A stretch of 64,000 nucleotides of DNA from IMGVR_UViG_3300035182_002586:1-64000; one strand, 5' to 3'; positions 9,772 to 54,131 are shown, counted from the stretch's first letter. Numbers and translations are program-made. The notes: a model not told the origin generated them from the letters alone.

Positions 9772-10671
9772 ATGGCCCCCGGAATGGTTCTTCGAGTTGC
9801 TGCCCGGTTCCAGGTTGAAAACCAGGAGGGGCGGGTACGGCTTGCAGCTAAGTACAAGGGCAAGACAGTTTCCGAAGAAGGGAACGTCATCTACCAGTAC
9901 AGTGAACGGCAGATCGCACTCCGCAACAAGGCGAAGGCCGAGAAAATCGAGGGCCTGAAAAGGCACATCGGTGACCTTCGGGCGACCGTCAAGAAAGATC
10001 TCCGCTCGGAAGATCCCGAGACGATGTTGACAGCACTCGCGGTGGCCTTGATGGACCACACGTTCGAGAGAGTCGGCAACGAGGAGTCAGCCAAGGACGG
10101 GCACGTTGGAGTGACTGGCTGGGCAAAAAAGCACATCAGCTTCGGCAAAAAAGTCACCGTCAGGTACGTCGGAAAGTCCGGCGTGAAGCACACAAAAGAG
10201 ATTACAGACGCGGGCCTAAAGAAGGCGCTCCGTGACGCCTATGAAGCGGTCGATGGGGACAACGAAAGCATCTTCTCGTGGGACGGCGGAAAGGTAACGG
10301 CCGAGAAGGTCAACGCCTACTTGGAGGAGTTTGGCATCACTGCGAAGGACATCCGAGGCTTCCACGCGAATGACACGATGCACGAGGCCCTACGAGCTGC
10401 ACGCAAAGCAGGCGGAAAGCTCCCCGAGGACAAGAAAGCTAGGGAGAAGCAACTCAAGGAGGAGTTCAAGAAAGCTCTCGAAGAGACGGCGGATGTCGTC
10501 GGCCACGAGCCTGCGACCCTCCGTTCACAGTACTTGGTCCCGGGGCTAGAGTCGGACTACCTACGGGACGGTACGATAACGGACTCTTTCATCAAGTCCT
10601 CTTCCAGTCTTGCAGCACGCGTCGTCGACCGTTATCTTAGGGTGCATGAAGTGGGTGATCTACGTCCTTGA
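9772..10671 (+). CDS. DNA topoisomerase IB (bacterial/viral type catalytic core)
   Basis: RVGNE, GKSG, KDIR, GHEPATLRSQY match the R-K-R-H/N-Y catalytic pentad of type IB enzymes. Confidence 0.85.
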   Translation: MAPGMVLRVAARFQVENQEGRVRLAAKYKGKTVSEEGNVIYQYSERQIALRNKAKAEKIEGLKRHIGDLRATVKKDLRSEDPETMLTALAVALMDHTFERVGNEESAKDGHVGVTGWAKKHISFGKKVTVRYVGKSGVKHTKEITDAGLKKALRDAYEAVDGDNESIFSWDGGKVTAEKVNAYLEEFGITAKDIRGFHANDTMHEALRAARKAGGKLPEDKKAREKQLKEEFKKALEETADVVGHEPATLRSQYLVPGLESDYLRDGTITDSFIKSSSSLAARVVDRYLRVHEVGDLRP

Positions 10672-11376
10672 GGATCCGCGTCCGGTACGTAGGAGTGACC
10701 CACCAAGAACCTAAGAAGCGGCTTCTCAATCATCTATCCCGAGCCCGAAAGGGTGCTCGTTACCATCTGTTCAACTGGATCCGAAAACTGCTAACGGAAG
10801 GCGTCGAGCCTACTTTGCGGGTAATCGAAACCGGGTCTGGGGACGGGTGGGGCGAGGCCGAGGCCAAGTGGATTACACGGCACCGCCTTCAAGGGTGTGC
10901 CCTCACGAACGCTACGGATGGAGGTGAGGGTTGCCCCGGGCATACGGTATCCGACGAAGCTCGCGCAAAGATCCGTGCTGCTCGTTTGGGGAAGCCTCTG
11001 ACAGAAGAACACAAGGCGAAGGTGGCTGCTGGTAACCGAGGGAAGAAGATGTCCCCGGAATCCATCGCTAGGGGCGTCGATAAGCGACGGGGGCTCAAGC
11101 ACACACCAGAAGCTAAAGCGAAGATCTCCGCCTCACGTAAAGGGGGGGAAAGGGTGGAAGCCTACCCCCGAGCAACTCGCTCAACGGGCCGAAGCTATCA
11201 AGACAGCCCTGGCGGCGAAACGTGCCTCCGGTTGGGTCAGACCCCCTGTGAGCAAGGAAGCGTGCGAAAAGATCAGTGCCTCTAAGAAAGGGTGGAAGCC
11301 TACCCCCGAGGCAAGAGCACGGATGTCTGCCGCGAGGCGACAACGGGACGCTTCACGCAAGACCGACCCGGTGTAG
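10646..11376 (+). pseudogene. GIY-YIG homing endonuclease with NUMOD3 repeats, two +1 frameshifts
   Basis: MKWVIYVLEDPR (10646) continues as VRYVGVT in the +1 frame; NATDGGEG; HTPEAKAKISASRKG repeats; second shift at G7 run 11142-11148; third frame ends TAG 11376. Confidence 0.75.
11149..11310 (+). repeat. 24-bp direct repeat AAAGGGTGGAAGCCTACCCCCGAG (2 copies)
   Basis: Copies at 11149-11172 and 11287-11310; both encode KGWKPTPE in the restored endonuclease frame. Confidence 0.8.
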
Positions 11377-11385
11377 ATGAGGGGG

Positions 11386-11961
11386 ATGCCCACCCCCCTC
11401 CAGATCGCCCCCAAGACCACCCTTCTCGTCACCGGTCGAGTCGGCGTGGGCAAGTCGCAGTTCCTCTACCACCTCGCGATCGACCATTCCCAGCGAGGGC
11501 AGAGGGTTCAGCTCTGGTCTCGTGACCTGGACCCCAACCGCCTCTCGGCACGTCTGCGATCGCACGGGGCAGGGCACGTGGAGGTCATCTCGGACCCCAT
11601 CACCGAGTCCCTGGCGGACGTCGCAATCAGGAAAGGGGTGGACCTCCTCTTGATCGACGACATCCACGAGATTCTCATGTCTGCGGACCCCTACGACCAA
11701 CCCGTAGGGTCGGGTGCCGCGGGGACCAAGATCATCGTCGACACAGCACGCGCCAAGGGTCTGCCTCTCGTTGCCACGATGGCACGGAGAGGCCCGAAGG
11801 ACGGGAAGGACCCAAACGTGGACGCGGGGGTCGGAGGGCTCTTCGACGAGTACTGGTGGTTCCGCACGACGCTGAACGTCGAGTGTCTGCGGGGCGCAGA
11901 TACGACACGGGCCTTCTACGTCGAACCCCTCGTCGACCGTCCTGTCCTGCACCACATCTGA
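11386..11961 (+). CDS. P-loop NTPase (RecA/DnaB-C-like fold)
   Basis: Walker A GRVGVGKS; Walker B LLLIDD. Confidence 0.7.
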   Translation: MPTPLQIAPKTTLLVTGRVGVGKSQFLYHLAIDHSQRGQRVQLWSRDLDPNRLSARLRSHGAGHVEVISDPITESLADVAIRKGVDLLLIDDIHEILMSADPYDQPVGSGAAGTKIIVDTARAKGLPLVATMARRGPKDGKDPNVDAGVGGLFDEYWWFRTTLNVECLRGADTTRAFYVEPLVDRPVLHHI

Positions 11962-12001
11962 GAAGTCCCCGGTGAGCCCCCAACTCACCGGGGATCCAGA
12001 C

Positions 12002-13237
12002 CTACTGCGCGGCTGCGGCCGCGGGCTTCCCAGAGAGCTGCCGCTCGATGTCGTTGAGAGCATCCGCGATCGAGGCCACGCCCGCTTTGTCCGCCGCCGC
12101 GAAGGGGGTGTTCGTGGCCTTGCAGGCGGCCTGCACGTCATACCACGCATTGTGACTCGTGAGCCCCTCTAGGAAGACGATGGCTCCGATGCGCCCCGCG
12201 CGGACGCGCTTCACCACACCCTTGATGTCCTTCGACGAGCCATTGTCGATCGAGAACCACCCCGGCTCGATACCGAAGCGCTCTTTCACCAGCTCGATCT
12301 TCTCCTCCCGGCGAAGCCCACCGACGAGGTAGAGCCCTGCGTCCTCGATGCGCTTCCGGAGGTTGGGCAGCTCCGGCCAGTCGTACGTCACCGGGCTCTC
12401 GGCGCGTTCCTTCTCCTTGGCTGGACGAGAGACGCGCGGTCCAGCCGGGGCTTGCGCGGCATCCCGGTCGAAGCGTTGGAGCCGGCGACGGGCATCCTGT
12501 GCAAGGAGGTGCCAGTTGTCGCGGAACGTCGGCGAAAGCCCCTTGATGAACCCGATCTCTTCCGGTAGCCCGCGCACGAACCCGTCGATGCGCTGCATGA
12601 GGCGTTCGAGCCGCCGATGGACCGGGTGGTCCATCTCGATGTGCCCCATGATCTGTCGCGCCTCGGCCACGATCGCCTGGAGCATGGGCTGGAGACGCAA
12701 CGCGTGATCTTCGGCGTCGGCCTTCTCGAACTCGGCGAGAAGGGCCTCCGCCTTGGCGATCTCTGCGCGCGTTGGAACATGACGGACGATCACTTCCCGA
12801 ACGGTGTCCGCGTCGTTCGAGGGCACGGCTCGCAGAGCGGACTCACTCAGCTCCGCGGGTCGGGGTACGGCTCGCAGGATCACCGGAACTGCGGGAGCCT
12901 CTTGGGGAACCGGTTCCGGGACCACTGGCGCGTCCTGTGGGGGCTCGTCGGCAACAGCAGGGGCTTCCTCCGGTAGGTCTCCCAACAGGCTGAGGAGCGC
13001 CCGGAGAGAGCTGCGGAGGTGCAACGCCGAGGGGTCGTCCTCGGGCGGAGGTAGCGGGTCGTGACCAAGCACCGAGAACACTTCGGTATGCACGTCGTGC
13101 TCGGCCTTACGGCGAGCGTGGGTGAGGTACGGATCGAGCCATCGGCGGACATCCTCGACAGCACCCGCCACGGGGGTGGTCCGAATCTCCACGCGTTTTC
13201 GAACCGCCTCCAGCAGCTTCTCGTTCAAGCCTTCCAT
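12002..13237 (-). CDS. hypothetical protein with C-terminal DUF2325-like domain
   Basis: C-terminal LTSHNAWYDVQAACKATNTPF...GVASIADAL pattern; GAGAGG RBS before ATG 13237. Confidence 0.6.
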   Translation of the reverse strand: MEGLNEKLLEAVRKRVEIRTTPVAGAVEDVRRWLDPYLTHARRKAEHDVHTEVFSVLGHDPLPPPEDDPSALHLRSSLRALLSLLGDLPEEAPAVADEPPQDAPVVPEPVPQEAPAVPVILRAVPRPAELSESALRAVPSNDADTVREVIVRHVPTRAEIAKAEALLAEFEKADAEDHALRLQPMLQAIVAEARQIMGHIEMDHPVHRRLERLMQRIDGFVRGLPEEIGFIKGLSPTFRDNWHLLAQDARRRLQRFDRDAAQAPAGPRVSRPAKEKERAESPVTYDWPELPNLRKRIEDAGLYLVGGLRREEKIELVKERFGIEPGWFSIDNGSSKDIKGVVKRVRAGRIGAIVFLEGLTSHNAWYDVQAACKATNTPFAAADKAGVASIADALNDIERQLSGKPAAAAAQ

Positions 13238-13329
13238 GGCGCCTCTCATAGGTGGGTCCCCGCGCCCCCTGTGGATGCGGCCACGTGATTCTGTGTACAC
13301 CGGGGCGAGCTGGTGTACCCTCACCCACG

Positions 13330-13890
13330 ATGCTCACGAAGAACGCTGTCAAGGCTGTCCGCGCGTACGAGAAGGCAACCCCAGATCGGGATGTCGCCCG
13401 TGCCCGAGTCACCGAAGGACACGTGACGCCTGGCCCCTACCTGGCCCTACCTCTCATCGGATGGCTCGCGCAGGTGGGAGGAGCACGCTTCCTCAGCCTC
13501 GGAATGGCGCTCATCCGCATCTCGGACAACTCGCCCGTCGGAAGTCTCGGGTGGGCCATCCCGTTCGGACCGAGAACGGACGAGACCTGTGCAAACGTCC
13601 TCGCAGCTCTCGGGTGGGACGGCCGCATCTGGCCCACGAACCCCGGCTGGCCGACGGGCACCGACCGAGAGGAGGCGATCCGCACGATGCTCGACGAGGC
13701 CAACCTCGGCAACGCGATCGTCTTCCCTCCGGATGAGACGCGTGGCGCCCCGGCCGTGCGCATCAATGTCCTTGCGAGTTCGGGCCCCTTCACCCTGGAC
13801 CCGTCTTGCGTGGGGGCTGCCAACGTCCCGGAGAGCTGGAAGCAGCGCCTTTGGGCGCTCGTCTCCGACCCCGCTTGGTTCCAGCGCTAG
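13330..13890 (+). CDS. hypothetical protein
   Basis: ATG 14 nt after GGTGTA. Confidence 0.65.
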   Translation: MLTKNAVKAVRAYEKATPDRDVARARVTEGHVTPGPYLALPLIGWLAQVGGARFLSLGMALIRISDNSPVGSLGWAIPFGPRTDETCANVLAALGWDGRIWPTNPGWPTGTDREEAIRTMLDEANLGNAIVFPPDETRGAPAVRINVLASSGPFTLDPSCVGAANVPESWKQRLWALVSDPAWFQR

Positions 13891-14423
13891 AAGCCCTCTT
13901 CGAGGATCCGATCCCATAGGGTGGGTGGGAGTGTCTTCTCTTGCGGCTTCTCCTGCGGAGTCAACGTGAACCCCGTGAGGGGCACCGCGGTGAACGGCGC
14001 CACTTCCCGCTGCTCCGTGAAGAACGGTTCGGCAGGGACGAGAACCAACCGCACTTCGTCCCGCGGGCTGAGCACGTCTTGGATGTGGCGCACCTCGCGG
14101 ACGATGTGAAGCACAGGCTCGTCATCCCCGTTCAGACGAAGAGCCACGCCGTCCAGGGGCCGCAGGTTGAACAACCTGGGGATCATACGGCCATCGATGA
14201 TGATATCCCCACCACGGTCGGACATGCGAGACTCTACGGTGAGGACCCCCGCTGACCCGAAGGACACGTCCGGGGGAACCCCCGGTTCATCCTCTGCGCT
14301 GAGGCTGTCTTCCAGTGCGTTCGCGATCCGCACCGCTTCACCGTGCTGCGCGAAGTCAGCCTCACCTCGAAGTAGGTCGAGAAGGAACCGCGCCGTGTCC
14401 TCGGCCAGCGTGATCGTCGGCAC
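13887..14423 (-). CDS. hypothetical protein with C-terminal TLWDRILEE tag
   Basis: GTG 12 nt after CGTTGTA; shared C-terminal motif. Confidence 0.65.
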   Translation of the reverse strand: MPTITLAEDTARFLLDLLRGEADFAQHGEAVRIANALEDSLSAEDEPGVPPDVSFGSAGVLTVESRMSDRGGDIIIDGRMIPRLFNLRPLDGVALRLNGDDEPVLHIVREVRHIQDVLSPRDEVRLVLVPAEPFFTEQREVAPFTAVPLTGFTLTPQEKPQEKTLPPTLWDRILEEGF

Positions 14424-14488
14424 ATGTCGATGCTACAACGCCAGAACCGCCCTCGCCAGAGGTTGCACTAGGTGTACCCTTCAAGCAG

Positions 14489-15139
14489 ATGGACGCAGCA
14501 TCCCTCGCACAGTTGTACGCCGAGCTGAGCCCACTTCTCCAGGAAGTGTCTCTTCGGATGCGGCCGTTCGAGGAGGCCGTCACGGTCCCTGACAGTGGGA
14601 CGGGGATGGCCGACAACTACAGCTACATCATGTCGGGGCCCGACGAGGTGTACCTCGGTGTCTACGAGATCCTCCACAAGGTCGCCCCGGCTGGCAGGAG
14701 TGCCCGAGGGAAGACGGCCGCCAAGTGGGAGAAGACGGGCCGACACGCCCTCTTCCTGTCTGCGCTGAACCTCCCCCGGAAGACCTATCACCAGCTCTCG
14801 GACGGCACATTCCCCCTCGAACGCGTCGTGACCGAAGCTCAACGGGTCATCCTCCGTCAGCGTAAGGATCGGGTCGAGGCCGAGCAGCGGCGGCGCCACA
14901 AGCAGAACTACACGGAGGTGGCTACCCGCTTGGCCAAACAGTTCCACCTCGACGACTCCGACGTGGATTGCCTCACCACTGGAAGGCCCGAAGGGGTCGA
15001 GCTGTCCTTCACGGGGCTCTCTGAGGATCGAGCACGACAGCTTCTCTCCCTGGCGCGTCAGGCGGGCTTCATCCAGAGACCACACGAACAGAAGACGCCC
15101 CTCCCCTCCATGTGGGACCACTTGCTGGACGAGAGCTGA
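14489..15139 (+). CDS. hypothetical protein with C-terminal SMWDHLLDE tag
   Basis: ATG 14 nt after GGTGTA; shared C-terminal motif. Confidence 0.7.
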   Translation: MDAASLAQLYAELSPLLQEVSLRMRPFEEAVTVPDSGTGMADNYSYIMSGPDEVYLGVYEILHKVAPAGRSARGKTAAKWEKTGRHALFLSALNLPRKTYHQLSDGTFPLERVVTEAQRVILRQRKDRVEAEQRRRHKQNYTEVATRLAKQFHLDDSDVDCLTTGRPEGVELSFTGLSEDRARQLLSLARQAGFIQRPHEQKTPLPSMWDHLLDES

Positions 15140-15576
15140 TGCCCCACAAGCTCAACCCAACGCAGCTCGATGTACTGTCCGTCTTGGACTGGCTGATGGA
15201 TCGATCCACGGACGCACGAGGTACGGGACGCACGTACGTCACAGCCATCGCTTGCATCCGCGCTGCGTGTCGGAACCCCTCGCAGTGGATCAGCGTGCAC
15301 GACTACCAGACGGCAGACCTACGCGCGCACCGACATCTCTTCGGCGTGATCATGGGGCTGATCCACGAGGACACCAACACGTATCACGGGCACCCCCTTG
15401 CGCGATGGGTGCGGGAGGAGGGGCACGGTCACATGTTCGTCCTTGACCTGCCTGCGCCCGTAGAGGACTGGTTGCCTGTGGGGGCGGTGGACATCTCCAT
15501 GATCCGGCTACCGCCCTCGGGACCGCCCCCATCCCCGACTGCGTGGGAGCACCTTCTCGACGAGGGTGCGATCTAG
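15139..15576 (+). CDS. hypothetical protein (degenerate P-loop RGTGRT) with C-terminal TAWEHLLDE tag
   Basis: TGATG overlap with previous gene; shared C-terminal motif. Confidence 0.65.
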   Translation: MPHKLNPTQLDVLSVLDWLMDRSTDARGTGRTYVTAIACIRAACRNPSQWISVHDYQTADLRAHRHLFGVIMGLIHEDTNTYHGHPLARWVREEGHGHMFVLDLPAPVEDWLPVGAVDISMIRLPPSGPPPSPTAWEHLLDEGAI

Positions 15577-16565
15577 GCAGGATCGTCGTCGATGTCGTAG
15601 GGCGGTCGCTCGACGACTGCGGCCAGAGCTTCGGGGAGAGCCGTGCTGTCCTCCTCGATCGCCTCTGTGTCCTCGACTTCGATGGGGGTAGAGATGGGTG
15701 GGATCGACTCCCCGCTGCGCCAGGTCGACGGTGACCGTCGACCGACAATAATCAGTTCGCTGATCGCCCCCCGGCCATTCGCCTTCGAGTTGATCGGGCG
15801 ACGCACCAGGACCGGGTGCAGCTCGAAGCCCTCATAAAGGGTCCGCACGATCTCCGTGTCAGAGTTCGATGCGACGACCGCTACCCCGCGCTCGACCAGA
15901 TCCTTGAAGAGCGCTGCGAGACGGTACTGCGCGTCGATGCCGAACCCGTTGGACGTGTACGACGTGAAGTCCGAGGTTGCGTTGACGGGGACGTAGGGAG
16001 GATCGAAGTACACAAGGTCGCCGTGTTTGGCGTCCGCACAGGCATCGGCGAAGTCCCCCTGCTTGATCGAGGCCCACCGATCCAGAATCGCCGAGCATGC
16101 ACGGAGGTTCACAGGGTCGCAGATGCGCGGGTTCTTATACTTGCCGAACGGGACGTTGAATTTGCCTGTCTTGTTCACGCGGTAGAGGCCGTTGAAGCAC
16201 GTGCGGTTGAGGAACAGCAGACGCGCCGCCCGGGTGATGGGGTCGAGGGATTCCGTGTGGAGAGCCCGCCACCACTCGAACGTCGAACGAGCATCCAGCT
16301 TGTACGCGTCGGTGATCTCCGAGAGCTTCGTGATCAGCTCCTCGGGGAAGTCTCGGATGGTGCGGTAGGCGGTGACCAGCTCGTCGTTCCAGTCGTTGAT
16401 GACTGCGCGCTCGAACCGGCCTTCGGCCGCAAGGGCGAAGAAGAGGGCACCGCCGCCGATGAACGGTTCGTAGTAGGTACGAACCCTCTTCGGGAAGAGG
16501 TCGAGGAGCGTGGGTAGGAGGGCCGTCTTCCCTCCCGCCCACTTCATGAAGGGGTGCGCTTGCAT
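15573..16565 (-). CDS. dam: Dam-family N6-adenine DNA methyltransferase
   Basis: KWAGGK, EPFIGGG, FNGLYRVN..G.FNVPFG, DPPY, SNS motifs. Confidence 0.93.
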   Translation of the reverse strand: MQAHPFMKWAGGKTALLPTLLDLFPKRVRTYYEPFIGGGALFFALAAEGRFERAVINDWNDELVTAYRTIRDFPEELITKLSEITDAYKLDARSTFEWWRALHTESLDPITRAARLLFLNRTCFNGLYRVNKTGKFNVPFGKYKNPRICDPVNLRACSAILDRWASIKQGDFADACADAKHGDLVYFDPPYVPVNATSDFTSYTSNGFGIDAQYRLAALFKDLVERGVAVVASNSDTEIVRTLYEGFELHPVLVRRPINSKANGRGAISELIIVGRRSPSTWRSGESIPPISTPIEVEDTEAIEEDSTALPEALAAVVERPPYDIDDDPA

Positions 16566-16613
16566 AGCGGGCCGGTACACCGGGTCACCCCCTTGGGGCT
16601 CGGGGCACTTTCG

Positions 16614-41837: not shown

Positions 41838-42029
41838 TCACGCCTCCGGGGGTAGAAACCCCCGGGTGACGAGAACGGCACCGTCCGGAGAGAAGACCCG
41901 GGCTTTGCCCTTCGTGCTGAGGAAGTAGCGGAGCATCTTCTCGGGGTCGTCGAACGTCCTGTCCGCCTCTCCTGGCTGACGAACGAGGTACCCCTGGAGA
42001 ACCCTACTCGGGGGTTCCGACGTGCTCAC
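41838..42029 (-). CDS. small hypothetical protein
   Basis: Protein-like C-terminal part of the 41838..42638 frame; start uncertain. Confidence 0.4.
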   Translation of the reverse strand: MSTSEPPSRVLQGYLVRQPGEADRTFDDPEKMLRYFLSTKGKARVFSPDGAVLVTRGFLPPEA

Positions 42030-42957
42030 GTCCAGCCTCGTACGCGAAGAGCAGGTGCTCGAACATCGAGTAGGGGTTGGGGTCACCCTCGGAGAGACGG
42101 AGAGAGAACCCGGCGGCCTTCGTGTGGCCTCCGCCACCGTGGGACCGTGCGAACGAAGAGCAGTCGAAGTTCGTGTGTGATCGCGTGGAGAAGACCAGAA
42201 TCCGCTTCCCGTCCTCCACGCGATAGGAGAACCCGACCACGAGGTCGGCCTCTTGGTCCAGGGTCTCTGCGGCGAAGGACGAGTGGGACAACCCCTCGAA
42301 GAGGACGACCCTCGTACCGTTCGTCGTCGTCGTGAAGCGATGCGCCTCCGCGATGGACTTCGAGGTCCTCTTGTCCTGGCTCGCGATCTTGGCCTCGCCC
42401 ACCCACTTGAACCGGGTGTCCCACGAAGCCGCGATCTCGGAGAACGGGAGCTGGAGCCAGAAGCTCTGCGTCGGGAAGGTGAGGATGGCCTGCTGCACGC
42501 GCGCAGCCTCCCACTCGGGGCTCTGGCGCTGCCACGTGTCGAAGACGCCTGCGAGCATCGCGAACCGCTCGGCGAAAGCACTCTGCTTCCCCATGGGCTT
42601 GCAGATGTGCTCGTAGACGAGACTTGCCCCGCAGACACCGGGCTGCGTCTTCTCGTCGCCGAAGCGACCGTTCTCCCCGAAGGACTCGACCAGGGCTTTC
42701 GCGGTCTTGTGGTGATCGAGAACGATCGAGCCGGCTTCTACGAAGTACCTTGCCCGATCAGGGTGCGGTGAGAAGTCGGCGAACAGGATGCCGGCCTCCG
42801 CCTTCATGAGCTTGTGAGCGTCCGTCGAGTACTGGACGAACTCCACCGTCGCCCACGGAAGAGCCTCGTGCGCGAGGATGGCGCTGGCCGTCCCGTCCGC
42901 GCAATTGTCGTGAACCACGATCTTCGTGACGGCCTTGAGCTTTTCGAGATCGAACAT
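42004..42957 (-). CDS. DHH/DHHA1 phosphoesterase (NrnB-like)
   Basis: H..C.DG, DFS, LDHH, DTW, GGGGHTKAAGF. Confidence 0.85.
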   Translation of the reverse strand: MFDLEKLKAVTKIVVHDNCADGTASAILAHEALPWATVEFVQYSTDAHKLMKAEAGILFADFSPHPDRARYFVEAGSIVLDHHKTAKALVESFGENGRFGDEKTQPGVCGASLVYEHICKPMGKQSAFAERFAMLAGVFDTWQRQSPEWEAARVQQAILTFPTQSFWLQLPFSEIAASWDTRFKWVGEAKIASQDKRTSKSIAEAHRFTTTTNGTRVVLFEGLSHSSFAAETLDQEADLVVGFSYRVEDGKRILVFSTRSHTNFDCSSFARSHGGGGHTKAAGFSLRLSEGDPNPYSMFEHLLFAYEAGREHVGTPE

Positions 42958-45774: not shown

Positions 45775-45789
45775 GAGGCCCCCCGGTGT

Positions 45790-46682: not shown

Positions 46683-46716
46683 AGGACACCGGAAGGTGGT
46701 CCCGAGGAGAGACTGA

Positions 46717-47685: not shown

Positions 47686-47730
47686 CTTGATCTCTCCTCT
47701 GTTCTGCATCTGTGACCCTACAAGGGCCCG

Positions 47731-47795
47731 AGACTAGTCTAGTACCGAAATTCGTGCAACGACCCCAATGAAGTCTTCCTCACTGGGGGTGTCAA
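47731..47795 (-). promoter_or_regulatory. two tandem sigma70-type promoters
   Basis: TTGACA-17-TTCATT (47795-47767) and TTGCAC-17-TAGTCT (47759-47731) upstream of the histone-like gene. Confidence 0.65.
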
Positions 47796-47813
47796 GTACC
47801 CAAAGAGGGTTTT

Positions 47814-48149: not shown

Positions 48150-48346
48150 ATGATGCCCATGGCCCTCAGATGTGCCTCCGACCTCCCGTCGGCCTTCGCT
48201 TTCTGCAAGCCAGTGAGCCTCCGGTCCCCCTTCTCGACCGCCCTCTCGATCGCCCGATCGATGAGCGCCGTCCACCCCCCGGCGGTCTGCGGGTGACGTT
48301 GCCTCGGAGCCTGCGGCCCCGTGTTGAAGACCCTCGACTTTGCCAT
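48098..48346 (-). CDS. hypothetical protein
   Basis: GGAGG RBS before ATG. Confidence 0.6.
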   Translation of the reverse strand: MAKSRVFNTGPQAPRQRHPQTAGGWTALIDRAIERAVEKGDRRLTGLQKAKADGRSEAHLRAMGIICEADLLREFPEPTGSG

Positions 48347-48361
48347 GGGACACCTCCAGCC

Positions 48362-48778
48362 TCACGCCGATGTAGTGGTCTCACCAGCGCTCAGGGCAGG
48401 CGCCGGGGGTTCGACCATCGCCCCCACATCCGGGAGCGGGTTCTCCGCGTCCCACGAGGCTGCGATCTCTTCGTAGAGTTCCTGCACGGCTTCCGGCTGG
48501 AGCTTCGCCACGTGGGCGATGACCCCGAGGATCGCAGCGCTATCGCGGTGGACCTTGCGTTCGAGGTCAGCCTTCTCCTGGATCAGCCCCGCGCACGCCT
48601 GCTGTACCTCGACGAGCCGAGGCATGATCTCCTGCACAAGGCCGAGCAGGTCGTTGAGCTGCTTCACCTTGTCCAGGTTCGAGAGTGCCTTCACGGCATC
48701 CCCGAGCGCGGCCAGGTTCGGCACGCCGGCCATTGCCTTGCGCGCCTGGTTGCGCGCGATCTTCCGTCCGATGCTCAT
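48362..48778 (-). CDS. hypothetical coiled-coil protein
   Basis: GAGGA RBS. Confidence 0.7.
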   Translation of the reverse strand: MSIGRKIARNQARKAMAGVPNLAALGDAVKALSNLDKVKQLNDLLGLVQEIMPRLVEVQQACAGLIQEKADLERKVHRDSAAILGVIAHVAKLQPEAVQELYEEIAASWDAENPLPDVGAMVEPPAPALSAGETTTSA

Positions 48779-48799
48779 TTGATCCTCATCTAGGTAGGT

Positions 48800-49165
48800 C
48801 TACTGCGAGAAGGGAGGTTGCCCCCTGAAGATCGCGTAGAAGGGGATCGACGCTGCCGTGTTGTTCCGGTTCACGTCGTTCTGAATCTCGTCGTCCTGTT
48901 CCGTTACCGGCAGCCGAGGCGTCGTCTCTGCGATCTCTCGGAGTCGGGGGTCCGTCGTGACACGCAAGAGGTCGGCTCGCGCGACATCGTTGCGTTCGAC
49001 GGAGAAGATCACCTGCGCCTCCGTCAGCGTGTCGAGGAGACAGATGCCGATCCGACCCTCTTCGGCTCGCTCCACCCACAGGTTGTCGGTGGTGTCCCCG
49101 TCACACAGAGTCCCTGCCGTAGGGGGCGGACAGGGAGGGGCATTCGGCGGGCGCTGGTTCGACAT
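48800..49165 (-). CDS. hypothetical protein
   Basis: GAGG RBS. Confidence 0.6.
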   Translation of the reverse strand: MSNQRPPNAPPCPPPTAGTLCDGDTTDNLWVERAEEGRIGICLLDTLTEAQVIFSVERNDVARADLLRVTTDPRLREIAETTPRLPVTEQDDEIQNDVNRNNTAASIPFYAIFRGQPPFSQ

Positions 49166-49208
49166 GTCGGTGGCCTCTGATCTCTAGGGGTCGGAAAGGA
49201 AGACTATC

Positions 49209-49502
49209 CTATCCGACCCCCAAGGGCTGCACCCAATCCGCTCGTAGAACCACCCTCTGGTCGTGCCCGCCTTCACAGGCCAGACGTACACGCCAGTAGA
49301 GGTAGGGCTTGCGCCTCCGGAGAGCGTAGGCAGTGGGGGTCGCCCGTAGCGAACACCCCGGCGTGGAGCACGTGACCCTGCCGAGGAACTCAGCGATCGC
49401 TTCGGGTGCGGGCATAGCCACAGCCGAAGCGATCTCCTCGTCCGAGAGGTCCTCGGAGTCCTCGTGAAGAGAGACTCCGGCTTCCTCAGGTCGCAGGGCC
49501 AT
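49209..49502 (-). CDS. hypothetical Zn-ribbon-like protein
   Basis: CSTPGC...CEGGH; TGATG overlap. Confidence 0.55.
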   Translation of the reverse strand: MALRPEEAGVSLHEDSEDLSDEEIASAVAMPAPEAIAEFLGRVTCSTPGCSLRATPTAYALRRRKPYLYWRVRLACEGGHDQRVVLRADWVQPLGVG

Positions 49503-49813
49503 CAGTCGTCCCACGAGTCGCGACGACGACCCCCGCCACCCCCGCCCTTCTTCCGGCCCCCGCCACCCCCGCCCTTGCGGTACTCCTCGTAGGCGGGCGC
49601 CGCCTGCTGCACGACGACCGGAGCGGGGACGCCACCCCCATCCCGCGCTTCCTTCTCGGCCTTACGTCGCTGACGACAGGGCTTGCAGCGGGTCGGGGGC
49701 GTGAACTGACGCTCAGCGAAGAACGCCTGCTCCCCCGCGGTGAAGGTGAACTGGTTCGGGCAGTCGCGGCACTGGATGACTTGATCGGCGGAGTTCGGAG
49801 TTTCGTTGTTCAT
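49502..49813 (-). CDS. zinc-ribbon (zf-trcl, CxxC-x-FT.GEQ) protein with Gly/Arg tail
   Basis: CRDC..FTFTAGEQAFF.ER.F..P.RCKPCR. Confidence 0.85.
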   Translation of the reverse strand: MNNETPNSADQVIQCRDCPNQFTFTAGEQAFFAERQFTPPTRCKPCRQRRKAEKEARDGGGVPAPVVVQQAAPAYEEYRKGGGGGGRKKGGGGGGRRRDSWDD

Positions 49814-49882
49814 GGGAGGTTTCTGCCTTGTTCCTTATGTCGAGATGCGCTCTCGGCCGGCGCCTCGGAAGTCGAGGTCGAT

Positions 49883-50719
49883 TCAGCGAAGGACGGGAAG
49901 CGAGCGGGTCGTGTTCCGCTTCTTGCCCGAAAGCTCTTGATCTGCGGCGTAACAGTAGGAGCAACCGAAGACGCAGCTCTCGTTGATGGTGAACGGGTCC
50001 ACCATCAGAACACAACCGCAACCCTCGGAAGATGCACGGGGACGGTCAGGCAACGAGAAGTCGTCGGGAGGTGCACACACGACCGACGCCAAATTCGCCA
50101 CCGAGGTAGCCCCCACGAGAGTCCTGTCCTCATTACAGAGCCCGACCGCCACCCCGACGTCGGCTGCCGCTTGGGCGAGCTTCGTCAGAAGGGCAACCTT
50201 AGCCTCCGTACCACGCGTCTCCGCCATCCGGTCGTTGGTCTGGAGGAACGACAGGACAGAGCTGTGGATGCCCATACCCGCCGCTGCGGTGGCGATCTTC
50301 ATGAATCGGTCGACCACGACCTCATCAGGAAGCAGGGGGATCGGGCTGAACCGCCAACGCACGCGATCCACACCGAAGGCTTGGACGACCTGCCGGAGAA
50401 GCTCTACTCCCTGGTCCAGGGTCGGGGCGCCCTTCTCGACTTCCTCCCACCCGGTGAGAGTCATGTGGATGCGCACGTCGTAGGGGCGAAGCATCTGCCG
50501 GTCGCGCACGAGGTTCGTGGGGTCCCTGGTCCAGAAGACCAGGCCGAGCACGTCCTTGGGCTTGAGCGACCACCGGTCCGGCAGGTACTCGTTCTGCGCG
50601 AACGCCGTCATCCACCCCTGCGTGAGCTGAGCCTGGAACCACAACCACTTGGCTGCCGGCACGTCCGTCCAGCGGGAAAGGCTGTACGGCAGATTTGCGT
50701 CCCGACCCGTCTTCACCAT
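49883..50719 (-). CDS. DUF1848-like Fe-S (radical-SAM-related) protein
   Basis: SRWTDVPA, VFWTRDP, WRFSPI, C-terminal CVFGCSYCYA. Confidence 0.75.
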   Translation of the reverse strand: MVKTGRDANLPYSLSRWTDVPAAKWLWFQAQLTQGWMTAFAQNEYLPDRWSLKPKDVLGLVFWTRDPTNLVRDRQMLRPYDVRIHMTLTGWEEVEKGAPTLDQGVELLRQVVQAFGVDRVRWRFSPIPLLPDEVVVDRFMKIATAAAGMGIHSSVLSFLQTNDRMAETRGTEAKVALLTKLAQAAADVGVAVGLCNEDRTLVGATSVANLASVVCAPPDDFSLPDRPRASSEGCGCVLMVDPFTINESCVFGCSYCYAADQELSGKKRNTTRSLPVLR

Positions 50720-50763
50720 GAACAGCATATACACCAGATCTACGACCCTCAGGACGAGAAACC

Positions 50764-51399
50764 CTACCGCATGAGGGCGGTGGGCTCACGATCCACACGG
50801 GGCCCGAGCACAGCCGACTGGAAGGCGTCGGCAACCCTCATGGCGGTGACCGACACGGTTTCCAAGGGGTGCTCCTCCCCCTTACCGCAAGAACCGCTGC
50901 ACTGGCCACCGCAAGAACCGCTGCACTGGCCACCACAAGTACCCGTACACGACCCCCCGCAAGTGCAACCACCCTCACAGGCGTGCAGGTACCTCGCAAG
51001 CACCCGGTGAGCTGTCTTCGACTCACTCTTGTACTGCACGGGTGTAGAGGCGGGAGCCATGGCTTCCTCCCCACCCTCGACGGAAGGGTCGCGGGTATCG
51101 TACGTGTGGTAGCGGTCTCCTTGGTAGTCGAGCAAGGGGACGGTCCGTGCGAGCGCCTCTCCCAACCAACGGGCGATGTCACTCGTCCCGAGGGGGAAAG
51201 ATCCGTCGACCATCGCACTCATGTGGGAGAACGAGTACTCGAACCGGTAGGACCTCGACACGGGCTCCAGCGTCGGCAAGTTCATCAGCGTAGCAGGGTC
51301 CCAAACCATCGCCTCCTCGACAATACGAAGAGTCAGCCCCCCGTTCCCCGTGTGGAAGTAGGACTCTTCGAGGACGCGTCGGGTGCGTTCAGTGCCCAT
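50764..51399 (-). CDS. hypothetical protein with RVLARY tag and Cys-Gly repeats
   Basis: HRVLARYLHA followed by (C..G.C)n; 24-bp tandem duplication 50884-50931. Confidence 0.65.
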   Translation of the reverse strand: MGTERTRRVLEESYFHTGNGGLTLRIVEEAMVWDPATLMNLPTLEPVSRSYRFEYSFSHMSAMVDGSFPLGTSDIARWLGEALARTVPLLDYQGDRYHTYDTRDPSVEGGEEAMAPASTPVQYKSESKTAHRVLARYLHACEGGCTCGGSCTGTCGGQCSGSCGGQCSGSCGKGEEHPLETVSVTAMRVADAFQSAVLGPRVDREPTALMR

Positions 51400-51406
51400 G
51401 GGTCCC

Positions 51407-52297
51407 TCAGGCCGCTACGGCGCGTTTGGAGACGGGCAGGAACTCTGACCCGTACTCGTTCATGAAGCGGAGCAGCCCACCCTGGTCGAGGATGTCCTGG
51501 TAGAACGTGCCCGGGACCGTGGGGTTCATCTCCCACGTGCAAAGGCGCACCGAAGTGGAGATACGGTCCAGCTTCTCGTTGAAGAATCGGTAGAACTGCC
51601 CCTGCTTCTCCCCAGCGCTGGACAGGGCGACCATCGAGGGGCCGGGAAGGCTTGACCCCACCACCGAAGGAAGCACAGCCTGGTAGAGGTCGGTACCACC
51701 ATCGTCGTGGTAGTACGCCATCTCGTCGAAGAGGACGAAGCTGTGCCGCACCCCGCAGAGACCCTTGAACCCGGCTGAACGCACCGTGATTCTCACGGAC
51801 GAGTTGTGGGTCTTGCAACCGCACACACAGTGGTTGGGGCTCGGGATCTGGATGGAGGAGGTCGTCTCCTGCGAGGGGGTGACGTGGCCCTCACGGACCG
51901 CCTTGCGGACCCCTTTCATCATGGTCTGAGCCATGGCGCGGTCGATCGTGAACCCGGCCACCGTCATCGCGCCGGGGTCCCGCTCCGCCTGCGCGAGTGC
52001 CGCCATCGCACGCTGGTAGAGCAGACGTGCCCCGAGGTAGGACTTGCCCGACCGGCGACCCGCTGCGAGGGCAACGAGTTGCTCCTCCGAGTTCACCTCA
52101 CGGGTGTTGGAGCGCCCCTCGTCGTAGAGGTAGACGAGGAAGTCCTTCTCCGTGAACAACCGCACGCGTCCGGTCAGGGGATGGGTGAACTCGACCCGAT
52201 CCGTATCTGACAGAGGAACCCCGTCCAGTACTTTCAAGGCGAATCGCTGACCGGGGTAGAGAGGGTACGCCCTCTCCGCGTGCTCGATGGTGTTCAT
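51407..52297 (-). CDS. ATPase-only paralog of terminase large subunit
   Basis: LYPGQRF, LYDEGR.N.RE, GRRSGKS, FDEMA, LSS, TWEMNP, F..EYG..F are colinear with the N-terminal half of TerL at 61177..63204. Confidence 0.8.
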   Translation of the reverse strand: MNTIEHAERAYPLYPGQRFALKVLDGVPLSDTDRVEFTHPLTGRVRLFTEKDFLVYLYDEGRSNTREVNSEEQLVALAAGRRSGKSYLGARLLYQRAMAALAQAERDPGAMTVAGFTIDRAMAQTMMKGVRKAVREGHVTPSQETTSSIQIPSPNHCVCGCKTHNSSVRITVRSAGFKGLCGVRHSFVLFDEMAYYHDDGGTDLYQAVLPSVVGSSLPGPSMVALSSAGEKQGQFYRFFNEKLDRISTSVRLCTWEMNPTVPGTFYQDILDQGGLLRFMNEYGSEFLPVSKRAVAA

Positions 52298-52307
52298 GCA
52301 GAAGGTC

Positions 52308-53165
52308 TCAGTGCCAGACGGAGTGGTGAACGTCGTAGTCCACCTTGTTGCTCTTGAGCCAATCACTGAACTTGGCCCAGGCGATCGACTTGAGGGCGCC
52401 CGGGTTCTCCTTGAGGAGCTTGTAGAGCTTGCGAGCGCTCGTCGGCTTGCCCTCGTAGAGCGTGTAGTGAGGGTCACCGCTGTGGCCCATGTCGGAGTCC
52501 GGCGAGTAAGCGGACCACTTCGTCCACTCGATGTGGACCGTGAAGTCCTTGCCCTCGGCGTTGAACGGGTCGACGTTCTCCGGAGTCACCTCCAGGAAGT
52601 AGACCTGCTGCTCCCACCAAGAGGTGCGACGAAGGAAGTCCCACGACCCAGGCTTGACGCCCTGGATCGCGTCGGCCTTCTTGATCACCTCGTCGGCAGC
52701 GTCCGCCATCCCCTGGCTGACCTTTTCCTTCACCTGGTCGTAGGTATCCGACGCGGAGATGTGCTGCCTCCGGATGATGTTGTCCGGAATGAAGGCGTCG
52801 AAGTTACCGTGCTGGCTGAAGTGCAGGTTGGTCTGCACCGTCGCGACACGGAGCTTGCGCTTGCCCTTCATCGGCAGCTCTTCCAGCTTCCACTGGTCGT
52901 GCGTCCACGAGAGGCGGAAGTCCTTGCCGACGAGCTTGCCGTCCCACGAGCCCTGGAGGAACTTCGCTGCGACGCGGACCGCTGCCCCACCGTTCGTGAG
53001 CCCCGACGCTTGCTTCGTCAGGTACTCGTCCTGGTGGCAGGAGTCCGAGCCCGGGTTGACGTTCTTGCAGTAGATCGACCATGCGGTCGCCCATGCCTGC
53101 TCGTCCGAGTAGGACGGGTTGCCTTCCTTCACTTCCTTGAAGTAGTCGTCGACAGGCTTCGGCAT
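52308..53165 (-). CDS. hypothetical protein with internal RVAAKF tag
   Basis: AGGAG RBS; ChaB-like N-terminal helix (EQAWATAWSIY). Confidence 0.75.
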   Translation of the reverse strand: MPKPVDDYFKEVKEGNPSYSDEQAWATAWSIYCKNVNPGSDSCHQDEYLTKQASGLTNGGAAVRVAAKFLQGSWDGKLVGKDFRLSWTHDQWKLEELPMKGKRKLRVATVQTNLHFSQHGNFDAFIPDNIIRRQHISASDTYDQVKEKVSQGMADAADEVIKKADAIQGVKPGSWDFLRRTSWWEQQVYFLEVTPENVDPFNAEGKDFTVHIEWTKWSAYSPDSDMGHSGDPHYTLYEGKPTSARKLYKLLKENPGALKSIAWAKFSDWLKSNKVDYDVHHSVWH

Positions 53166-53205
53166 GGTGTGGGCTCCTATGGGGCACCCGCGATAAACAC
53201 TTCCG

Positions 53206-53865
53206 TTAGTGCAAATGACGCCCCCAGCTCGGGGCCGAGGTCGGATCGAAGGCCGTATCCTGCATGTCCACGAAGTTCGGCCAGTCGACGCCAGGCACGA
53301 CAAGCGCGATCTGGTAGCGCCAACGCTTGACCCCGTGCTCGTGGCCGGGCCCTAGGCGCTCCGCCACGTACCCGAACACATAGGACACGGAATCCTCGTG
53401 GTAGGGCTTCCGCAGCCGAACCCACGCACCCTCAGGAAGCTGCGGCTTCTCTGGCTCAACCTTCCGTCTTGCACCGGGCACCTCGACCCACTTGTGCACG
53501 AGGGCGGGCACGGTCGTGAACCCACTCTCAAGGGAGGCGTTCGTCCTGTGGATCCCGTCGTCGATGTGCAGTCTCCCCTCGTGCTCTGTGAGCTGTACGG
53601 GGGGCAGAGCCACACCGGCTGCGATCGCTGCCCGGACCTTCTCAATCCGGTCCTTGTGCCACACAGGGGGCACGCTGATGTGCGAGAGGGGCACCAGCTC
53701 GAACCGATACTCGTTGTGCCCTCCGAACTCCGCGTCCGACTCGGCCCTGGCCTCAGGGTTGTTGAGGGTGTGGAGCTGCGCGTGTACGACGCCTTCGTCG
53801 TAGCGGTAGTGCGTCGTCGACGCGACGAACCGCGCGGCAACCCGGAGGGCCAGCGGGGGCATCAC
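53206..53865 (-). CDS. ParB/Srx-like domain protein with N-terminal RVAARF tag
   Basis: LPPVQL......IDDGIHR motif. Confidence 0.7.
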   Translation of the reverse strand: MMPPLALRVAARFVASTTHYRYDEGVVHAQLHTLNNPEARAESDAEFGGHNEYRFELVPLSHISVPPVWHKDRIEKVRAAIAAGVALPPVQLTEHEGRLHIDDGIHRTNASLESGFTTVPALVHKWVEVPGARRKVEPEKPQLPEGAWVRLRKPYHEDSVSYVFGYVAERLGPGHEHGVKRWRYQIALVVPGVDWPNFVDMQDTAFDPTSAPSWGRHLH

Positions 53866-54131
53866 ACGTCGTCGGAGCGGAGGAGGTATTCGAGGCCCTC
53901 CTTGATGGACTTCACGAGCGCTTCGACACCCTCGTGGGTCGACTCCACCTGGTCGATCATCCAGTCGAGGGACTGCTCGGTGTGGAGCGTACGCGCGTGC
54001 TGGAGCGCCTTGTGGAGCGCAGCGTCAGCCACACGCAGCTCGGCGAGCATCGCCTTGGCGTTCCCCTCGATGTGAGGGTCCATCTGACGGCGGGCGTAGC
54101 GGTTGGCGACCTTCGAGGCGAGGGGGTCCAT
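53862..54131 (-). CDS. small helical protein with N-terminal KVANRY tag
   Basis: 89 aa; overlaps the next start. Confidence 0.65.
   Translation of the reverse strand: MDPLASKVANRYARRQMDPHIEGNAKAMLAELRVADAALHKALQHARTLHTEQSLDWMIDQVESTHEGVEALVKSIKEGLEYLLRSDDV

What the first reader, a model, noticed from the sequence alone, without database searches (positions are those of the whole stretch)
9772..54131. Second recurrent tag (RVAARF / KVANRY / RVLARY): candidate capsid-targeting or prohead-protease signal
Seen: VLRVAARF and LAARVVDRYL (topo IB), LALRVAARFVA (ParB-like 53865), LASKVANRYA (54131), AVRVAAKFL (internal in 53165), AHRVLARYLHA and AMRVADAF (50764). The consensus is about [AL]-x-[RK]-V-[AL]-x-[RK]-[FY], at termini or domain junctions. 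The set does not overlap the W-tag set. Known: T4 internal proteins use a short capsid-targeting sequence that the prohead protease removes. Inference: these are virion cargo proteins injected with the DNA. With the W tag, this would give two parallel address systems, each matched to its own promoter class.
Basis: partly seen in the sequence, partly recalled or inferred. Interest (0 to 1): 0.75.

Follow-up and report, generated by a model that had tools for sequence, protein, structure and literature searches.

The report
Shared address tag on megaphage proteins
About two dozen unrelated proteins of a 0.5-0.6 Mb soil phage carry the same 14-residue helix (consensus L-A-x-R-V-A-x-R-F/Y) at one end, and it most likely docks them to one common partner, probably the assembling phage head.

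Summary
All seven quoted strings are present. Genome-wide (529 kb, about 697 genes) the motif [LT]-A-x-R-V-[AL]-x-R-[FY] occurs at 28 sites in 23-24 proteins, against 0-0.4 expected, always in the coding frame. Thirteen sites lie in the first 20 residues and eight in the last 40. The tag is added to unrelated enzymes outside their catalytic cores, often in two or three copies. It is conserved on orthologues in related huge phages with 44-64% GC.

The receptor is not established. My best reading (0.4) is a prohead or virion docking helix. One tagged protein lies between portal and prohead protease in the head operon. Another lies in the terminase module. Tagged genes share a promoter-like motif with head genes and avoid the commonest motif. 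The cargo looks like host-takeover enzymes.

The main rival (0.2) is docking to ClpX. A phage ClpX sits inside the island of tagged genes, and the tag resembles the SspB tail RGGRPALRVVK. However, two ClpX-less relatives keep the tag.

The parts
9784..10671 (+). Type IB topoisomerase carrying three tags. An in-frame ATG at 9772 would add four residues.
   Evidence: Pfam Topoisom_I E 1e-28, residues 47-245. PDB homologues align only to residues 34-271, so the tags lie outside the catalytic core.
9784..9825 (+). N-terminal tag MVLRVAARFQVENQ of topo IB. A degenerate second copy, RVRLAAKY, follows at about 9829-9864.
   Evidence: PSSM 26.6 bits. Orthologues in G004, G008 and G009 keep an N-terminal tag; G004 has two tandem copies.
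10609..10650 (+). C-terminal tag LAARVVDRYLRVHE of topo IB, after a Ser-rich linker.
   Evidence: PSSM 21.2 bits. The G008 orthologue keeps a C-terminal RVVARYL.
9759..9770 (+). Loose copy of the class-B promoter-like motif (ATCCTCCTGGTG) upstream of topo IB.
   Evidence: It does not match the strict class-B pattern, so it is a weak member.
50764..51399 (-). 211-aa protein with a Cys/Gly-rich repeat and two tags (50974-51015 and 50806-50847).
   Evidence: PSSM 27.2 and 23.0 bits. No Pfam or PHROG family.
52308..53165 (-). 285-aa protein made of a Trp-rich N-terminal module, then the tag (52944-52985), then a C-terminal domain.
   Evidence: PSSM 21.2 bits. The G004 orthologue begins with the tag. 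This family recurs next to ClpX in relatives.
53206..53865 (-). 219-aa protein with an N-terminal tag (53812-53853). It has a DGIHR motif reminiscent of ParB, but no family hit.
   Evidence: PSSM 27.2 bits. Pfam and PHROG gave no family.
53862..54131 (-). 89-aa helical protein with an N-terminal tag (54081-54122).
   Evidence: PSSM 22.5 bits. An orthologue with the tag lies near ClpX in L157.
54144..54156 (-). Class-B promoter-like motif ATCCTTTTATCAG, 25 nt before the start of 53862-54131.
   Evidence: The same ATCCTTTTATCAG core stands before the Q-rich scaffold-like head gene (genome 344771-346282).
54555..55877 (-). Phage ClpX: C4 zinc-binding N-domain, GYVG pore loop and an LGF (IGF-type) loop. 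It is untagged and has a class-A promoter-like motif.
   Evidence: Pfam zf-C4_ClpX, AAA_2 and ClpB_D2-small. E 1e-95 to solved ClpX. Sequence. N-domain aligns to 1OVX/2DS5. CGGTGTAA lies 16 nt before the ATG.
57453..59369 (-). Portal protein.
   Evidence: PHROG 16240, E 6e-28. 60-72% identical in 30 or more IMG/VR relatives.
61177..63177 (-). Large terminase.
   Evidence: PHROG 2, 9 and 17415.
63920..64000 (-). 3' part of a 134-aa basic protein (gene 63920-64324). Its N-terminal tag, the best-scoring in the genome, lies just outside the window at about 64271-64312.
   Evidence: PSSM 28.2 bits. This is the most widely conserved tagged family, always upstream of TerL.

Best explanation
The tag is a modular docking helix of about 14 residues. 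It has a broad hydrophobic face (L-3, A-2, V1, A/L2, F/Y5, L6, A8) and two arginines one helical turn apart. A Pro/Gly/Ser-rich linker leashes it to either end of a protein, or between its domains.

It addresses a polymorphic set of late-expressed phage proteins to one conserved receptor. These include at least four zincin peptidases, a type IB topoisomerase, a 2H phosphoesterase, a HAD phosphatase, a J-domain protein, a protein with a ParB-like motif and small basic proteins. I think the receptor is most likely a component of the assembling prohead (capsid inner surface, scaffold/core or portal). The tagged proteins would then be encapsidated and delivered with the DNA, as with the capsid targeting sequence of T4 internal proteins, but without an obligatory N-terminal position and without a recognisable protease site.

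Shown: the motif exists, is non-random, is mostly terminal, is added to unrelated folds, is often multivalent, is conserved across the clade, is linked to a distinct promoter-like motif, and is present in a head-operon protein. Inferred: the receptor, packaging and injection.
For: (1) Enrichment, coding frame and terminal bias.

(2) The tag is an add-on. The topo IB core (residues 34-271) aligns to poxvirus and bacterial enzymes, and the tags lie outside it. The 2H and HAD domains end well before their C-terminal tags. A Pro-rich breaker follows the helix (28% Pro at +12) and Ser-rich linkers precede C-terminal tags.

(3) Conservation. There are 90 non-redundant tags in related IMG/VR huge phages of 44-64% GC, on orthologues of topo IB, the 2H enzyme, the zincins and the 63920 family.

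(4) Head context. In relatives the gene order is portal, twice-tagged large protein, two small genes, prohead protease (PHROG 18299; 40% identical to the annotated Tunturi_5 protease), Q-rich scaffold-like protein, a 190-aa protein in the position of phage G's capsid-decoration gene (gp26), then the major capsid protein. The 63920 family sits two genes upstream of TerL everywhere. L020 and L021 have an extra tagged gene inside the head operon. In G000 three tagged genes lie 3-8 kb from the capsid gene.

(5) Regulation. The class-B motif precedes 6 of 23 tagged genes against 16 of 674 others (p = 3e-5). It also precedes the post-portal protein, the scaffold-like gene and a PHROG-240 'head protein'. 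Class A (ClpX, replication genes, about 120 genes) precedes no tagged gene.

(6) Multivalency suits a lattice or oligomeric receptor: tandem, N-plus-C or triple tags.

(7) The tag consensus does not change across phages whose capsid protein is 82-96% identical, while portal and ClpX are only 50-70% identical.

(8) Precedent: the T4 capsid targeting sequence is shared by divergent, fast-evolving internal proteins, and T4 Alt is processed at both termini (PMC9026906).
Against: There are no virion data of any kind. No cultured relative carries the tag: Tunturi_5 gave only one probably spurious antisense hit and phage G gave none.

No protease site lies beside the tag. No tag was found on the scaffold-like protein, protease, capsid protein or portal themselves.

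'Class B = late' is inferred only from which genes carry the motif. Only 6 of 23 tagged genes match the strict pattern.

Most variable tagged genes cluster around ClpX, far from the head operon in relatives.

The large post-portal protein has no recognised domain.
Confidence: 0.4

Rival explanations
1. The tag is a ClpX-docking peptide, like the XB tail of SspB. It would tether proteins to the zinc-binding N-domain of the phage-encoded ClpX, or of the host ClpX. The outcome could be timed degradation, service as adaptors that bring host targets to ClpXP, or unfolding and translocation.
For: A complete ClpX with an intact C4 N-domain, GYVG loop and LGF loop lies at 54555-55877. In 45 IMG/VR loci centred on ClpX, 49 of 59 tag hits lie within 3 kb of ClpX and 58 of 59 on its strand. 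None lies in the distal 7 kb upstream. In G000, four tagged genes lie within 4 kb downstream of ClpX.

E. coli XB is RGGRPALRVVK (PMC3983244 and PMC8808172). It shares A-x-R-V-hydrophobic with the tag, and 'LRV' is the commonest form beside ClpX. XB works at any position in a polypeptide (PMC12373786), and the zinc-binding domain is the common adaptor platform (PMC7226468). Leashing by a flexible linker and multivalency match SspB.
Against: G009 has the same island, between the conserved flanking genes, with tagged genes but no ClpX. G008 (direct terminal repeats) has neither ClpX nor any zf-C4_ClpX domain, yet keeps intact tags on topo IB (N and C) and the 2H enzyme.

The XB likeness is only p = 0.0125 against random 11-mers. 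ClpX has a different promoter-like class from the tagged genes. The adjacency may simply reflect a hypervariable island. G000 has the most tags but the most divergent zinc-binding domain (26 bits against 47 bits in G004). A head-operon protein carrying ClpX tags would be odd.
Confidence: 0.2
2. The tag docks to some other partner. Candidates are another phage or host hub protein, an intracellular compartment or membrane patch, or the tags themselves: tagged proteins might bundle into an inner-body-like assembly.
For: The helix is amphipathic, with only positions -1, +3 and +7 free to vary. That fits a deep groove or a helical bundle. The receptor was not identified by any test here. The set includes a J-domain co-chaperone with a C-terminal tag, which suggests recruitment to a site of protein handling.
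Against: The strict sequence conservation (V invariant, R/K at 0, mostly R at +4, F/Y at +5) argues against generic membrane binding. No BMC shell or encapsulin gene is present. Nothing positively points to another hub.
Confidence: 0.25
3. The motif has no function of its own. It is either a chance product of an Ala/Arg/Val-rich proteome, or an N-terminal helix inherited by gene duplication within one paralogous family.
For: The proteome is Ala-, Leu-, Val- and Arg-rich. At least four tagged proteins are paralogous zincins. The ThyX hit is probably coincidental.
Against: Observed 14 against 0.3 expected, and 28 against at most 0.4, with composition preserved. There are no hits in non-coding frames. 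The motif is kept in relatives of 44% GC. It is present on unrelated folds (topo IB, 2H, HAD, J-domain) outside their homologous cores and at either terminus.
Confidence: 0.02

Closest known systems
Capsid targeting sequence (CTS) of phage T4 internal proteins IPI-III and Alt
   Same: Both are short conserved peptides shared by otherwise divergent, fast-evolving, non-essential proteins. T4's targets them into the prohead core, and the genes are late and lie in a variable region. T4 Alt is processed at both termini (PMC9026906; PMC5694885). Here too there is a hypervariable island of tagged genes, small basic tagged proteins and enzymes suited to host takeover.
   Different: The T4 CTS is a 10-20-residue N-terminal propeptide ending in a gp21 site (L/I-x-E). 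The tag here also occurs at C-termini, at domain junctions and in tandem. It has no sequence likeness to MKTYQEFIAE (recalled from memory, not checked here) and no adjacent cleavage motif. Packaging is unproven.
XB / XBR ClpX-binding tail of the SspB adaptor
   Same: Both are short peptides on a flexible leash and work at any position. Both share an A-x-R-V-hydrophobic core. A ClpX with the cognate N-domain is encoded amid the tagged genes.
   Different: As I recall it (not checked here), XB is a 7-11-residue C-terminal strand-forming tail. The tag here has the i/i+4 periodicity of a helix and needs a further R-[FY] that XB lacks. Statistical likeness is modest (p = 0.0125). ClpX-less relatives keep the tag.
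Long N-terminal propeptides of phiKZ/SPN3US-type giant-phage head and ejection proteins
   Same: These are giant phages that package many enzymes. Paralogous head proteins share identical N-termini thought to target them into the prohead (PMC5694885).
   Different: Those propeptides are 20 to more than 100 residues long and end at A/S/G-x-E sites cut by the prohead protease. No such site is enriched here, and the phage lineage is different (the capsid protein is related to phage G and Tunturi_5).
Cargo-loading peptides of encapsulins and encapsulation peptides of bacterial microcompartments
   Same: Both are short terminal peptides (amphipathic helices in microcompartments) on flexible linkers, at the N- or C-terminus of unrelated enzymes, docking to the inside of a protein shell. 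Encapsulin shells share the HK97 fold with phage capsids (my own knowledge).
   Different: No BMC or encapsulin shell gene is in the genome. The only HK97-type shell is the phage capsid. The sequence motifs are unrelated.

Membership tests
T4-type capsid targeting sequence | A short conserved peptide shared by otherwise unrelated or divergent proteins | tested here: met
   28 sites in 23 proteins of unrelated folds.
T4-type capsid targeting sequence | An N-terminal propeptide ending in a prohead-protease cleavage site (L/I-x-E in T4; S/A/G-x-E in phiKZ-like phages) | tested here: not met
   Only 13 of 28 sites are N-terminal. [SAG]-x-E follows 17% of tags against 16% of controls, and no other conserved site was seen.
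T4-type capsid targeting sequence | Tagged proteins are found in proheads and virions and are ejected into the host | not testable with these tools
   The phage is uncultured. The cultured distant relatives (Tunturi_5, phage G) show no credible tag.
T4-type capsid targeting sequence | Expressed late, together with head genes | tested here: inconclusive
   Tagged genes share a class-B promoter-like motif with head-operon genes (p = 3e-5) and avoid class A. There are no expression data.
SspB-type ClpX-binding (XB) motif | A ClpX with an intact zinc-binding N-domain is available to bind it | tested here: inconclusive
   Present in G000 and most relatives. Absent from tag-bearing G008 and G009, where only a host ClpX could serve.
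SspB-type ClpX-binding (XB) motif | Sequence likeness to the XB core (…ALRVVK) | tested here: inconclusive
   A, R and V match. XB scores 6.3 bits on the tag PSSM, p = 0.0125.
SspB-type ClpX-binding (XB) motif | Physical binding to the ClpX N-domain dimer | tested here: inconclusive
   Co-folding of two N-domains, Zn and a 26-residue tag scored 0.20, below the 0.32 mark. The tool returned no verdict.
SspB-type ClpX-binding (XB) motif | Works on a flexible leash, independent of position | tested here: met
   N-terminal, C-terminal, junctional and tandem copies, with Pro/Gly/Ser linkers.
Encapsulin or microcompartment cargo peptides | A dedicated shell protein (encapsulin Linocin_M18 or BMC domain) is encoded | tested here: not met
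   No PF04454 or PF00936 match in the genome.

The most novel reading that the evidence does not exclude
The tag is a natural ClpX-tethering anchor. On this reading, a clade of huge soil phages equips a fast-evolving set of enzymes and binding modules with an XB-like helix. The helix would plug them into a phage-encoded or host ClpX in one of two ways. They could act as PROTAC-like adaptors that feed host defence proteins to ClpXP, or as substrates that ClpX unfolds and threads, for example into the prohead. Either would be a phage-borne targeted-degradation or protein-translocation system with its own address code.
Probability: 0.2. Interest if true: 0.85.

Novelty: new variant of a known kind. 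Interest (0 to 1): 0.68.

Why it matters
How huge phages load, sort or time the dozens of accessory enzymes they encode is largely unknown outside T4 and the phiKZ group. Here a simple, portable 14-residue code marks about 24 proteins in one genome and at least 90 non-redundant sites across a clade of uncultured 0.3-0.6 Mb soil phages.

This gives a direct handle on the problem. The tag predicts which unknown genes belong to one functional set. It can be synthesised for pull-downs to find the receptor. If it is a packaging signal, it could be used to load foreign proteins into capsids, as the T4 capsid targeting sequence is. If instead it docks to ClpX, it would be the first phage-encoded adaptor or degron code for a phage-encoded unfoldase. 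Either way, the set of zincins, nucleases and phosphoesterases is a catalogue of candidate host-takeover or anti-defence effectors.

Tried and rejected
(1) Co-folding of the ClpX N-domain dimer, Zn and the best tag scored 0.20, under the 0.32 mark. The tool's verdict was 'no answer', so this is not evidence either way.

(2) Cleavage-site search after N-terminal tags: no [SAG]-x-E enrichment and no other conserved site.

(3) Tags on the head proteins themselves (capsid protein, scaffold-like protein, protease, portal, the 190-aa pre-capsid protein): none.

(4) The ClpP-family gene (genome 143509-144126) as a ClpX partner. It lies next to an exonuclease. It is absent from ClpX-positive G004 and present in ClpX-less G009, so it is not coupled to ClpX.

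(5) Annotation of the large post-portal protein by Pfam, PHROG and the ESM Atlas, in G000 and seven relatives: nothing. Its C-terminal third is helical with a Q/E-rich stretch.

(6) Cultured relatives as a route to virion proteomics. Tunturi_5 (capsid protein 49% identical) gave only one probably spurious antisense hit, and phage G (39%) gave none.

(7) IMG/VR-wide scan for the DNA pattern encoding LRVAARF. Of the 80 loci listed, about 11 are real tags, all in recognisable families of this clade. The rest are out-of-frame noise or an unrelated conserved ORF.

(8) Twin-arginine signal, clamp-binding and membrane-anchor readings were rejected on sequence grounds: no h-region, C-terminal copies exist, and residue conservation is strict.

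(9) BMC and encapsulin shells: absent.

(10) Megablast of the window against GenBank phages: no match.

Full report
WHAT THE GENOME IS. The window is the first 64 kb of a 528,957-bp, 63.9% GC virus record. That record is cut from a 620,031-bp metagenome contig whose flank also looks phage-like. It encodes a portal, large terminase, UvsX/RecA, NAD ligase, RecD2 helicase, ClpX, a 310-aa HK97-type major capsid protein, a prohead protease and a tail sheath. More than 30 IMG/VR contigs of up to 452 kb have portals 60-72% identical. The nearest cultured phages by capsid protein are Tunturiibacter phage Tunturi_5 (49% identity; an Acidobacteriota host) and Bacillus phage G (39%). Because 64% GC produces many spurious ORFs, I built a codon-usage gene call of 697 genes.

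THE OBSERVATION. All seven quoted strings are present. The six-residue core occurs 23 times against 1.8. An iterated PSSM separates 28 sites (18-28 bits) from everything else (11 bits or less), with 0-0.4 expected. All 28 lie in the coding frame of called genes. Thirteen have the core Arg within the first 20 residues (p = 3e-7), usually two to eight residues after the Met. Eight lie in the last 40 residues.

ANATOMY. The consensus is [LT]-A-x-R-V-[AL]-x-R-[FY]-[LQA]-x-A-[ST]. Variable positions fall at -1, +3 and +7, which is the periodicity of a helix with one exposed stripe. Across 90 non-redundant copies in the clade the helix is followed by a breaker (Pro 28% at +12). C-terminal copies are preceded by Ser/Thr-rich linkers.

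Copies are often multiple. Topo IB has two tandem N-terminal copies and one C-terminal copy. Gene 299120 has two in tandem. Gene 335722 has one at each end. Gene 50764 has two, and the large head-operon protein has two.

The tag is an add-on. Solved poxvirus and bacterial topo IB structures align only to residues 34-271. The 2H and HAD domains end well before their C-terminal tags. The 'internal' tag of 52308-53165 marks a fusion point, because the G004 orthologue begins with it.

WHO CARRIES IT. The carriers are:
- topo IB;
- a LigT/2H phosphoesterase, with a weak Acb1 hit;
- a HAD_SAK_1 phosphatase;
- at least four paralogous zincins (HExxH … E-x-F-A-E-x-F);
- a J-domain protein with a C-terminal copy;
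- a protein with a ParB-like DGxHR motif;
- a Cys-repeat protein;
- several small helical or basic proteins.
The hit inside ThyX lies within its catalytic domain and is probably chance.

CONSERVATION. Relatives of 44-64% GC carry the same tag on orthologues and on genes with no G000 counterpart. A collection-wide DNA scan for one heptapeptide form recovered about 11 real copies among the 80 loci listed. All were in recognisable families of this clade, chiefly the 63920 family. Tunturi_5 gave only one probably spurious antisense hit and phage G gave none.

TWO CONTEXTS.

(a) ClpX. Gene 54555-55877 is a complete ClpX. In 45 IMG/VR loci centred on ClpX, 49 of 59 tag hits lie within 3 kb of it, and 58 of 59 on the same strand. 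Gene-by-gene comparison shows a conserved backbone (homologues of genome genes 308124 and 49883). Between these lies a hypervariable island holding ClpX and varying tagged genes. ClpX adaptors dock through short peptides to its zinc-binding domain, and XB of SspB is RGGRPALRVVK, active at any position.

However, G009 has the island with tagged genes and no ClpX. G008, which has terminal repeats, lacks the island, ClpX and any ClpX-type zinc finger, yet keeps intact tags on topo IB and the 2H enzyme. XB's fit to the tag profile is only p = 0.0125. Co-folding gave no verdict.

(b) The head. In relatives the order is portal, a 1,100-1,400-aa protein with two tags (one after a conserved NYKNVGGS motif near residue 75, one about 250 residues from the end), two small genes, prohead protease, a Q-rich scaffold-like protein, a 190-aa protein in the position of phage G's decoration gene, and a capsid protein that is 82-96% identical across the clade. 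In G000 this operon is split, with the portal in the window and the rest at 343-354 kb. The 63920 family lies two genes upstream of TerL in every relative examined.

REGULATION. Three upstream motif classes stand out.
- Class A, YGGTGTA[GC], sits 16-19 nt before about 95 start codons, and about 120 genes within 10-40 nt, including ClpX and replication genes.
- Class C, GATGGATC, is concentrated at 420-520 kb.
- Class B, (A/T)TCCTYTT(G/A)T, sits 20-55 nt upstream of 22 genes.
Class B precedes the post-portal protein, the scaffold-like gene and a PHROG-240 head protein. It is almost the only class in the long structural blocks. It precedes 6 of 23 tagged genes against 16 of 674 others (p = 3e-5). 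Class A precedes none, against 120 of 674 (p = 0.02).

WEIGHING. Chance and simple paralogy are excluded. For a head-docking role:
- membership of the head operon and terminase module;
- co-regulation with head genes;
- an effector-like, fast-evolving cargo, for which late expression makes sense mainly if the proteins are carried into the next cell;
- multivalency;
- a tag that stays constant alongside an unusually constant capsid protein;
- persistence in ClpX-less phages.
Against it: no virion data, no protease site, and no tag on core head proteins.

For ClpX docking: the island, the XB likeness, and the leash-and-position logic. Against it: the ClpX-less genomes, the different promoter class, and the modest statistics. 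I put head or virion docking at 0.4, ClpX docking at 0.2, another receptor or self-assembly at 0.25, and leave the remainder unassigned.

COMPARISON WITH WHAT IS KNOWN. The system works most like the T4 capsid targeting sequence, but it fails the N-terminal-propeptide-plus-cleavage criterion. I therefore do not file it as a member. It is a new variant of the 'shared address peptide' idea in a different phage lineage. Phage-encoded ClpX has been noted in jumbo phages and suggested to act as a translocase or assembly aid (PMC7824862). ClpX and ClpP were detected in phage G virions (PMC12484599). I found no report of a cognate tag.

Noticed in passing
window 1-64000 and locus L192: The 528,957-bp 'provirus' record is cut from a 620,031-bp contig (JGI 3300035182, Ga0373636_0000001). 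The DNA beyond the window's start carries small phage-like genes (Endonuclease_7, an RF-1 domain, an ABC ATPase), not obvious host genes. The phage may therefore be about 620 kb and the provirus call an artefact.
   Followed up: partly
genome-wide; in the window for example 54555-55877 (16 nt upstream), 55899-56495, 57251-57430, 6893-8086, 42004-42957: The motif YGGTGTA[GC] sits at a fixed 16-19 nt before about 95 start codons. That is too far for a Shine-Dalgarno site and looks like a promoter for near-leaderless transcripts. A third motif, GATGGATC, precedes about 55 genes, concentrated at 420-520 kb.
   Followed up: partly
window 52308-53165 (-), residues 1-57; relatives' ClpX loci L131-L161: A Trp-rich N-terminal module (…SDEQAWATAWSIYCKN…) recurs on many different ORFs in the same hypervariable island in relatives. 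Here it is on the same protein as the RVAAKF tag. Pfam gave no family.
   Followed up: partly
window 50764-51399 (-), residues 140-172: A Cys/Gly repeat (C-x-x-G-G-x-C-x-G-x-C-G-G-Q-C-S-G-S-C, repeated) lies between two tags. It looks like a metal- or disulfide-rich linker and has no family match.
   Followed up: no
loci L151, L153, L154, L160, L161 (ClpX ORFs of 777-795 aa); protein P0064: Some relatives' ClpX genes are about 350 residues longer. One database homologue carries Hom_end_hint and LAGLIDADG domains, which indicates an intein inside ClpX.
   Followed up: no
genome 343027-343959 (-) and portal loci L019-L052: The 310-aa major capsid protein is 82-96% identical among phages whose portal, ClpX and other proteins are only 45-70% identical. 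Its first 21 residues are not conserved, so they could be a propeptide. A homing-endonuclease-like gene (341940-342905) sits beside it.
   Followed up: partly
genome 85097-86308, 135639-136754, 335722-337029, 337614-338390: Four or more paralogous minimal zincins (HE[LMF]GH … E-x-F-A-E-x-F) all carry the tag. My gene call for 85097-86308 probably starts about 93 codons too early; the true start is likely the Met of MDPLAIKVARRF.
   Followed up: partly
genome 125601-126635 (-): A J-domain protein (HPD motif) ends in …IAHRVVSRYINRV, a tag at the extreme C-terminus that the PSSM under-scored (8.4 bits). It has a class-B motif upstream.
   Followed up: partly
window 54318-57254 (+): A 978-aa ORF lies antisense to ClpX and its neighbours. 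It is almost certainly a high-GC artefact. My caller's 56520-57254(+) gene is doubtful for the same reason, so 56495-57251 may hold an uncalled minus-strand gene.
   Followed up: no
loci L198, L213, L217, L224 and others (IMG/VR sample 3300045988, about 40% GC): An unrelated conserved ORF containing …FCRLHPFHAFKLRVAARFAGYFQI… recurs in many 30-60-kb viral contigs. It matches the heptapeptide by DNA pattern but has none of the tag's context.
   Followed up: no
genome 143509-144126 (-): A 205-aa ClpP-family protein (Pfam CLP_protease, E 1e-22) lies next to an Mre11-like exonuclease, not in the head operon. It is present in ClpX-less G009 and absent from ClpX-positive G004.
   Followed up: partly
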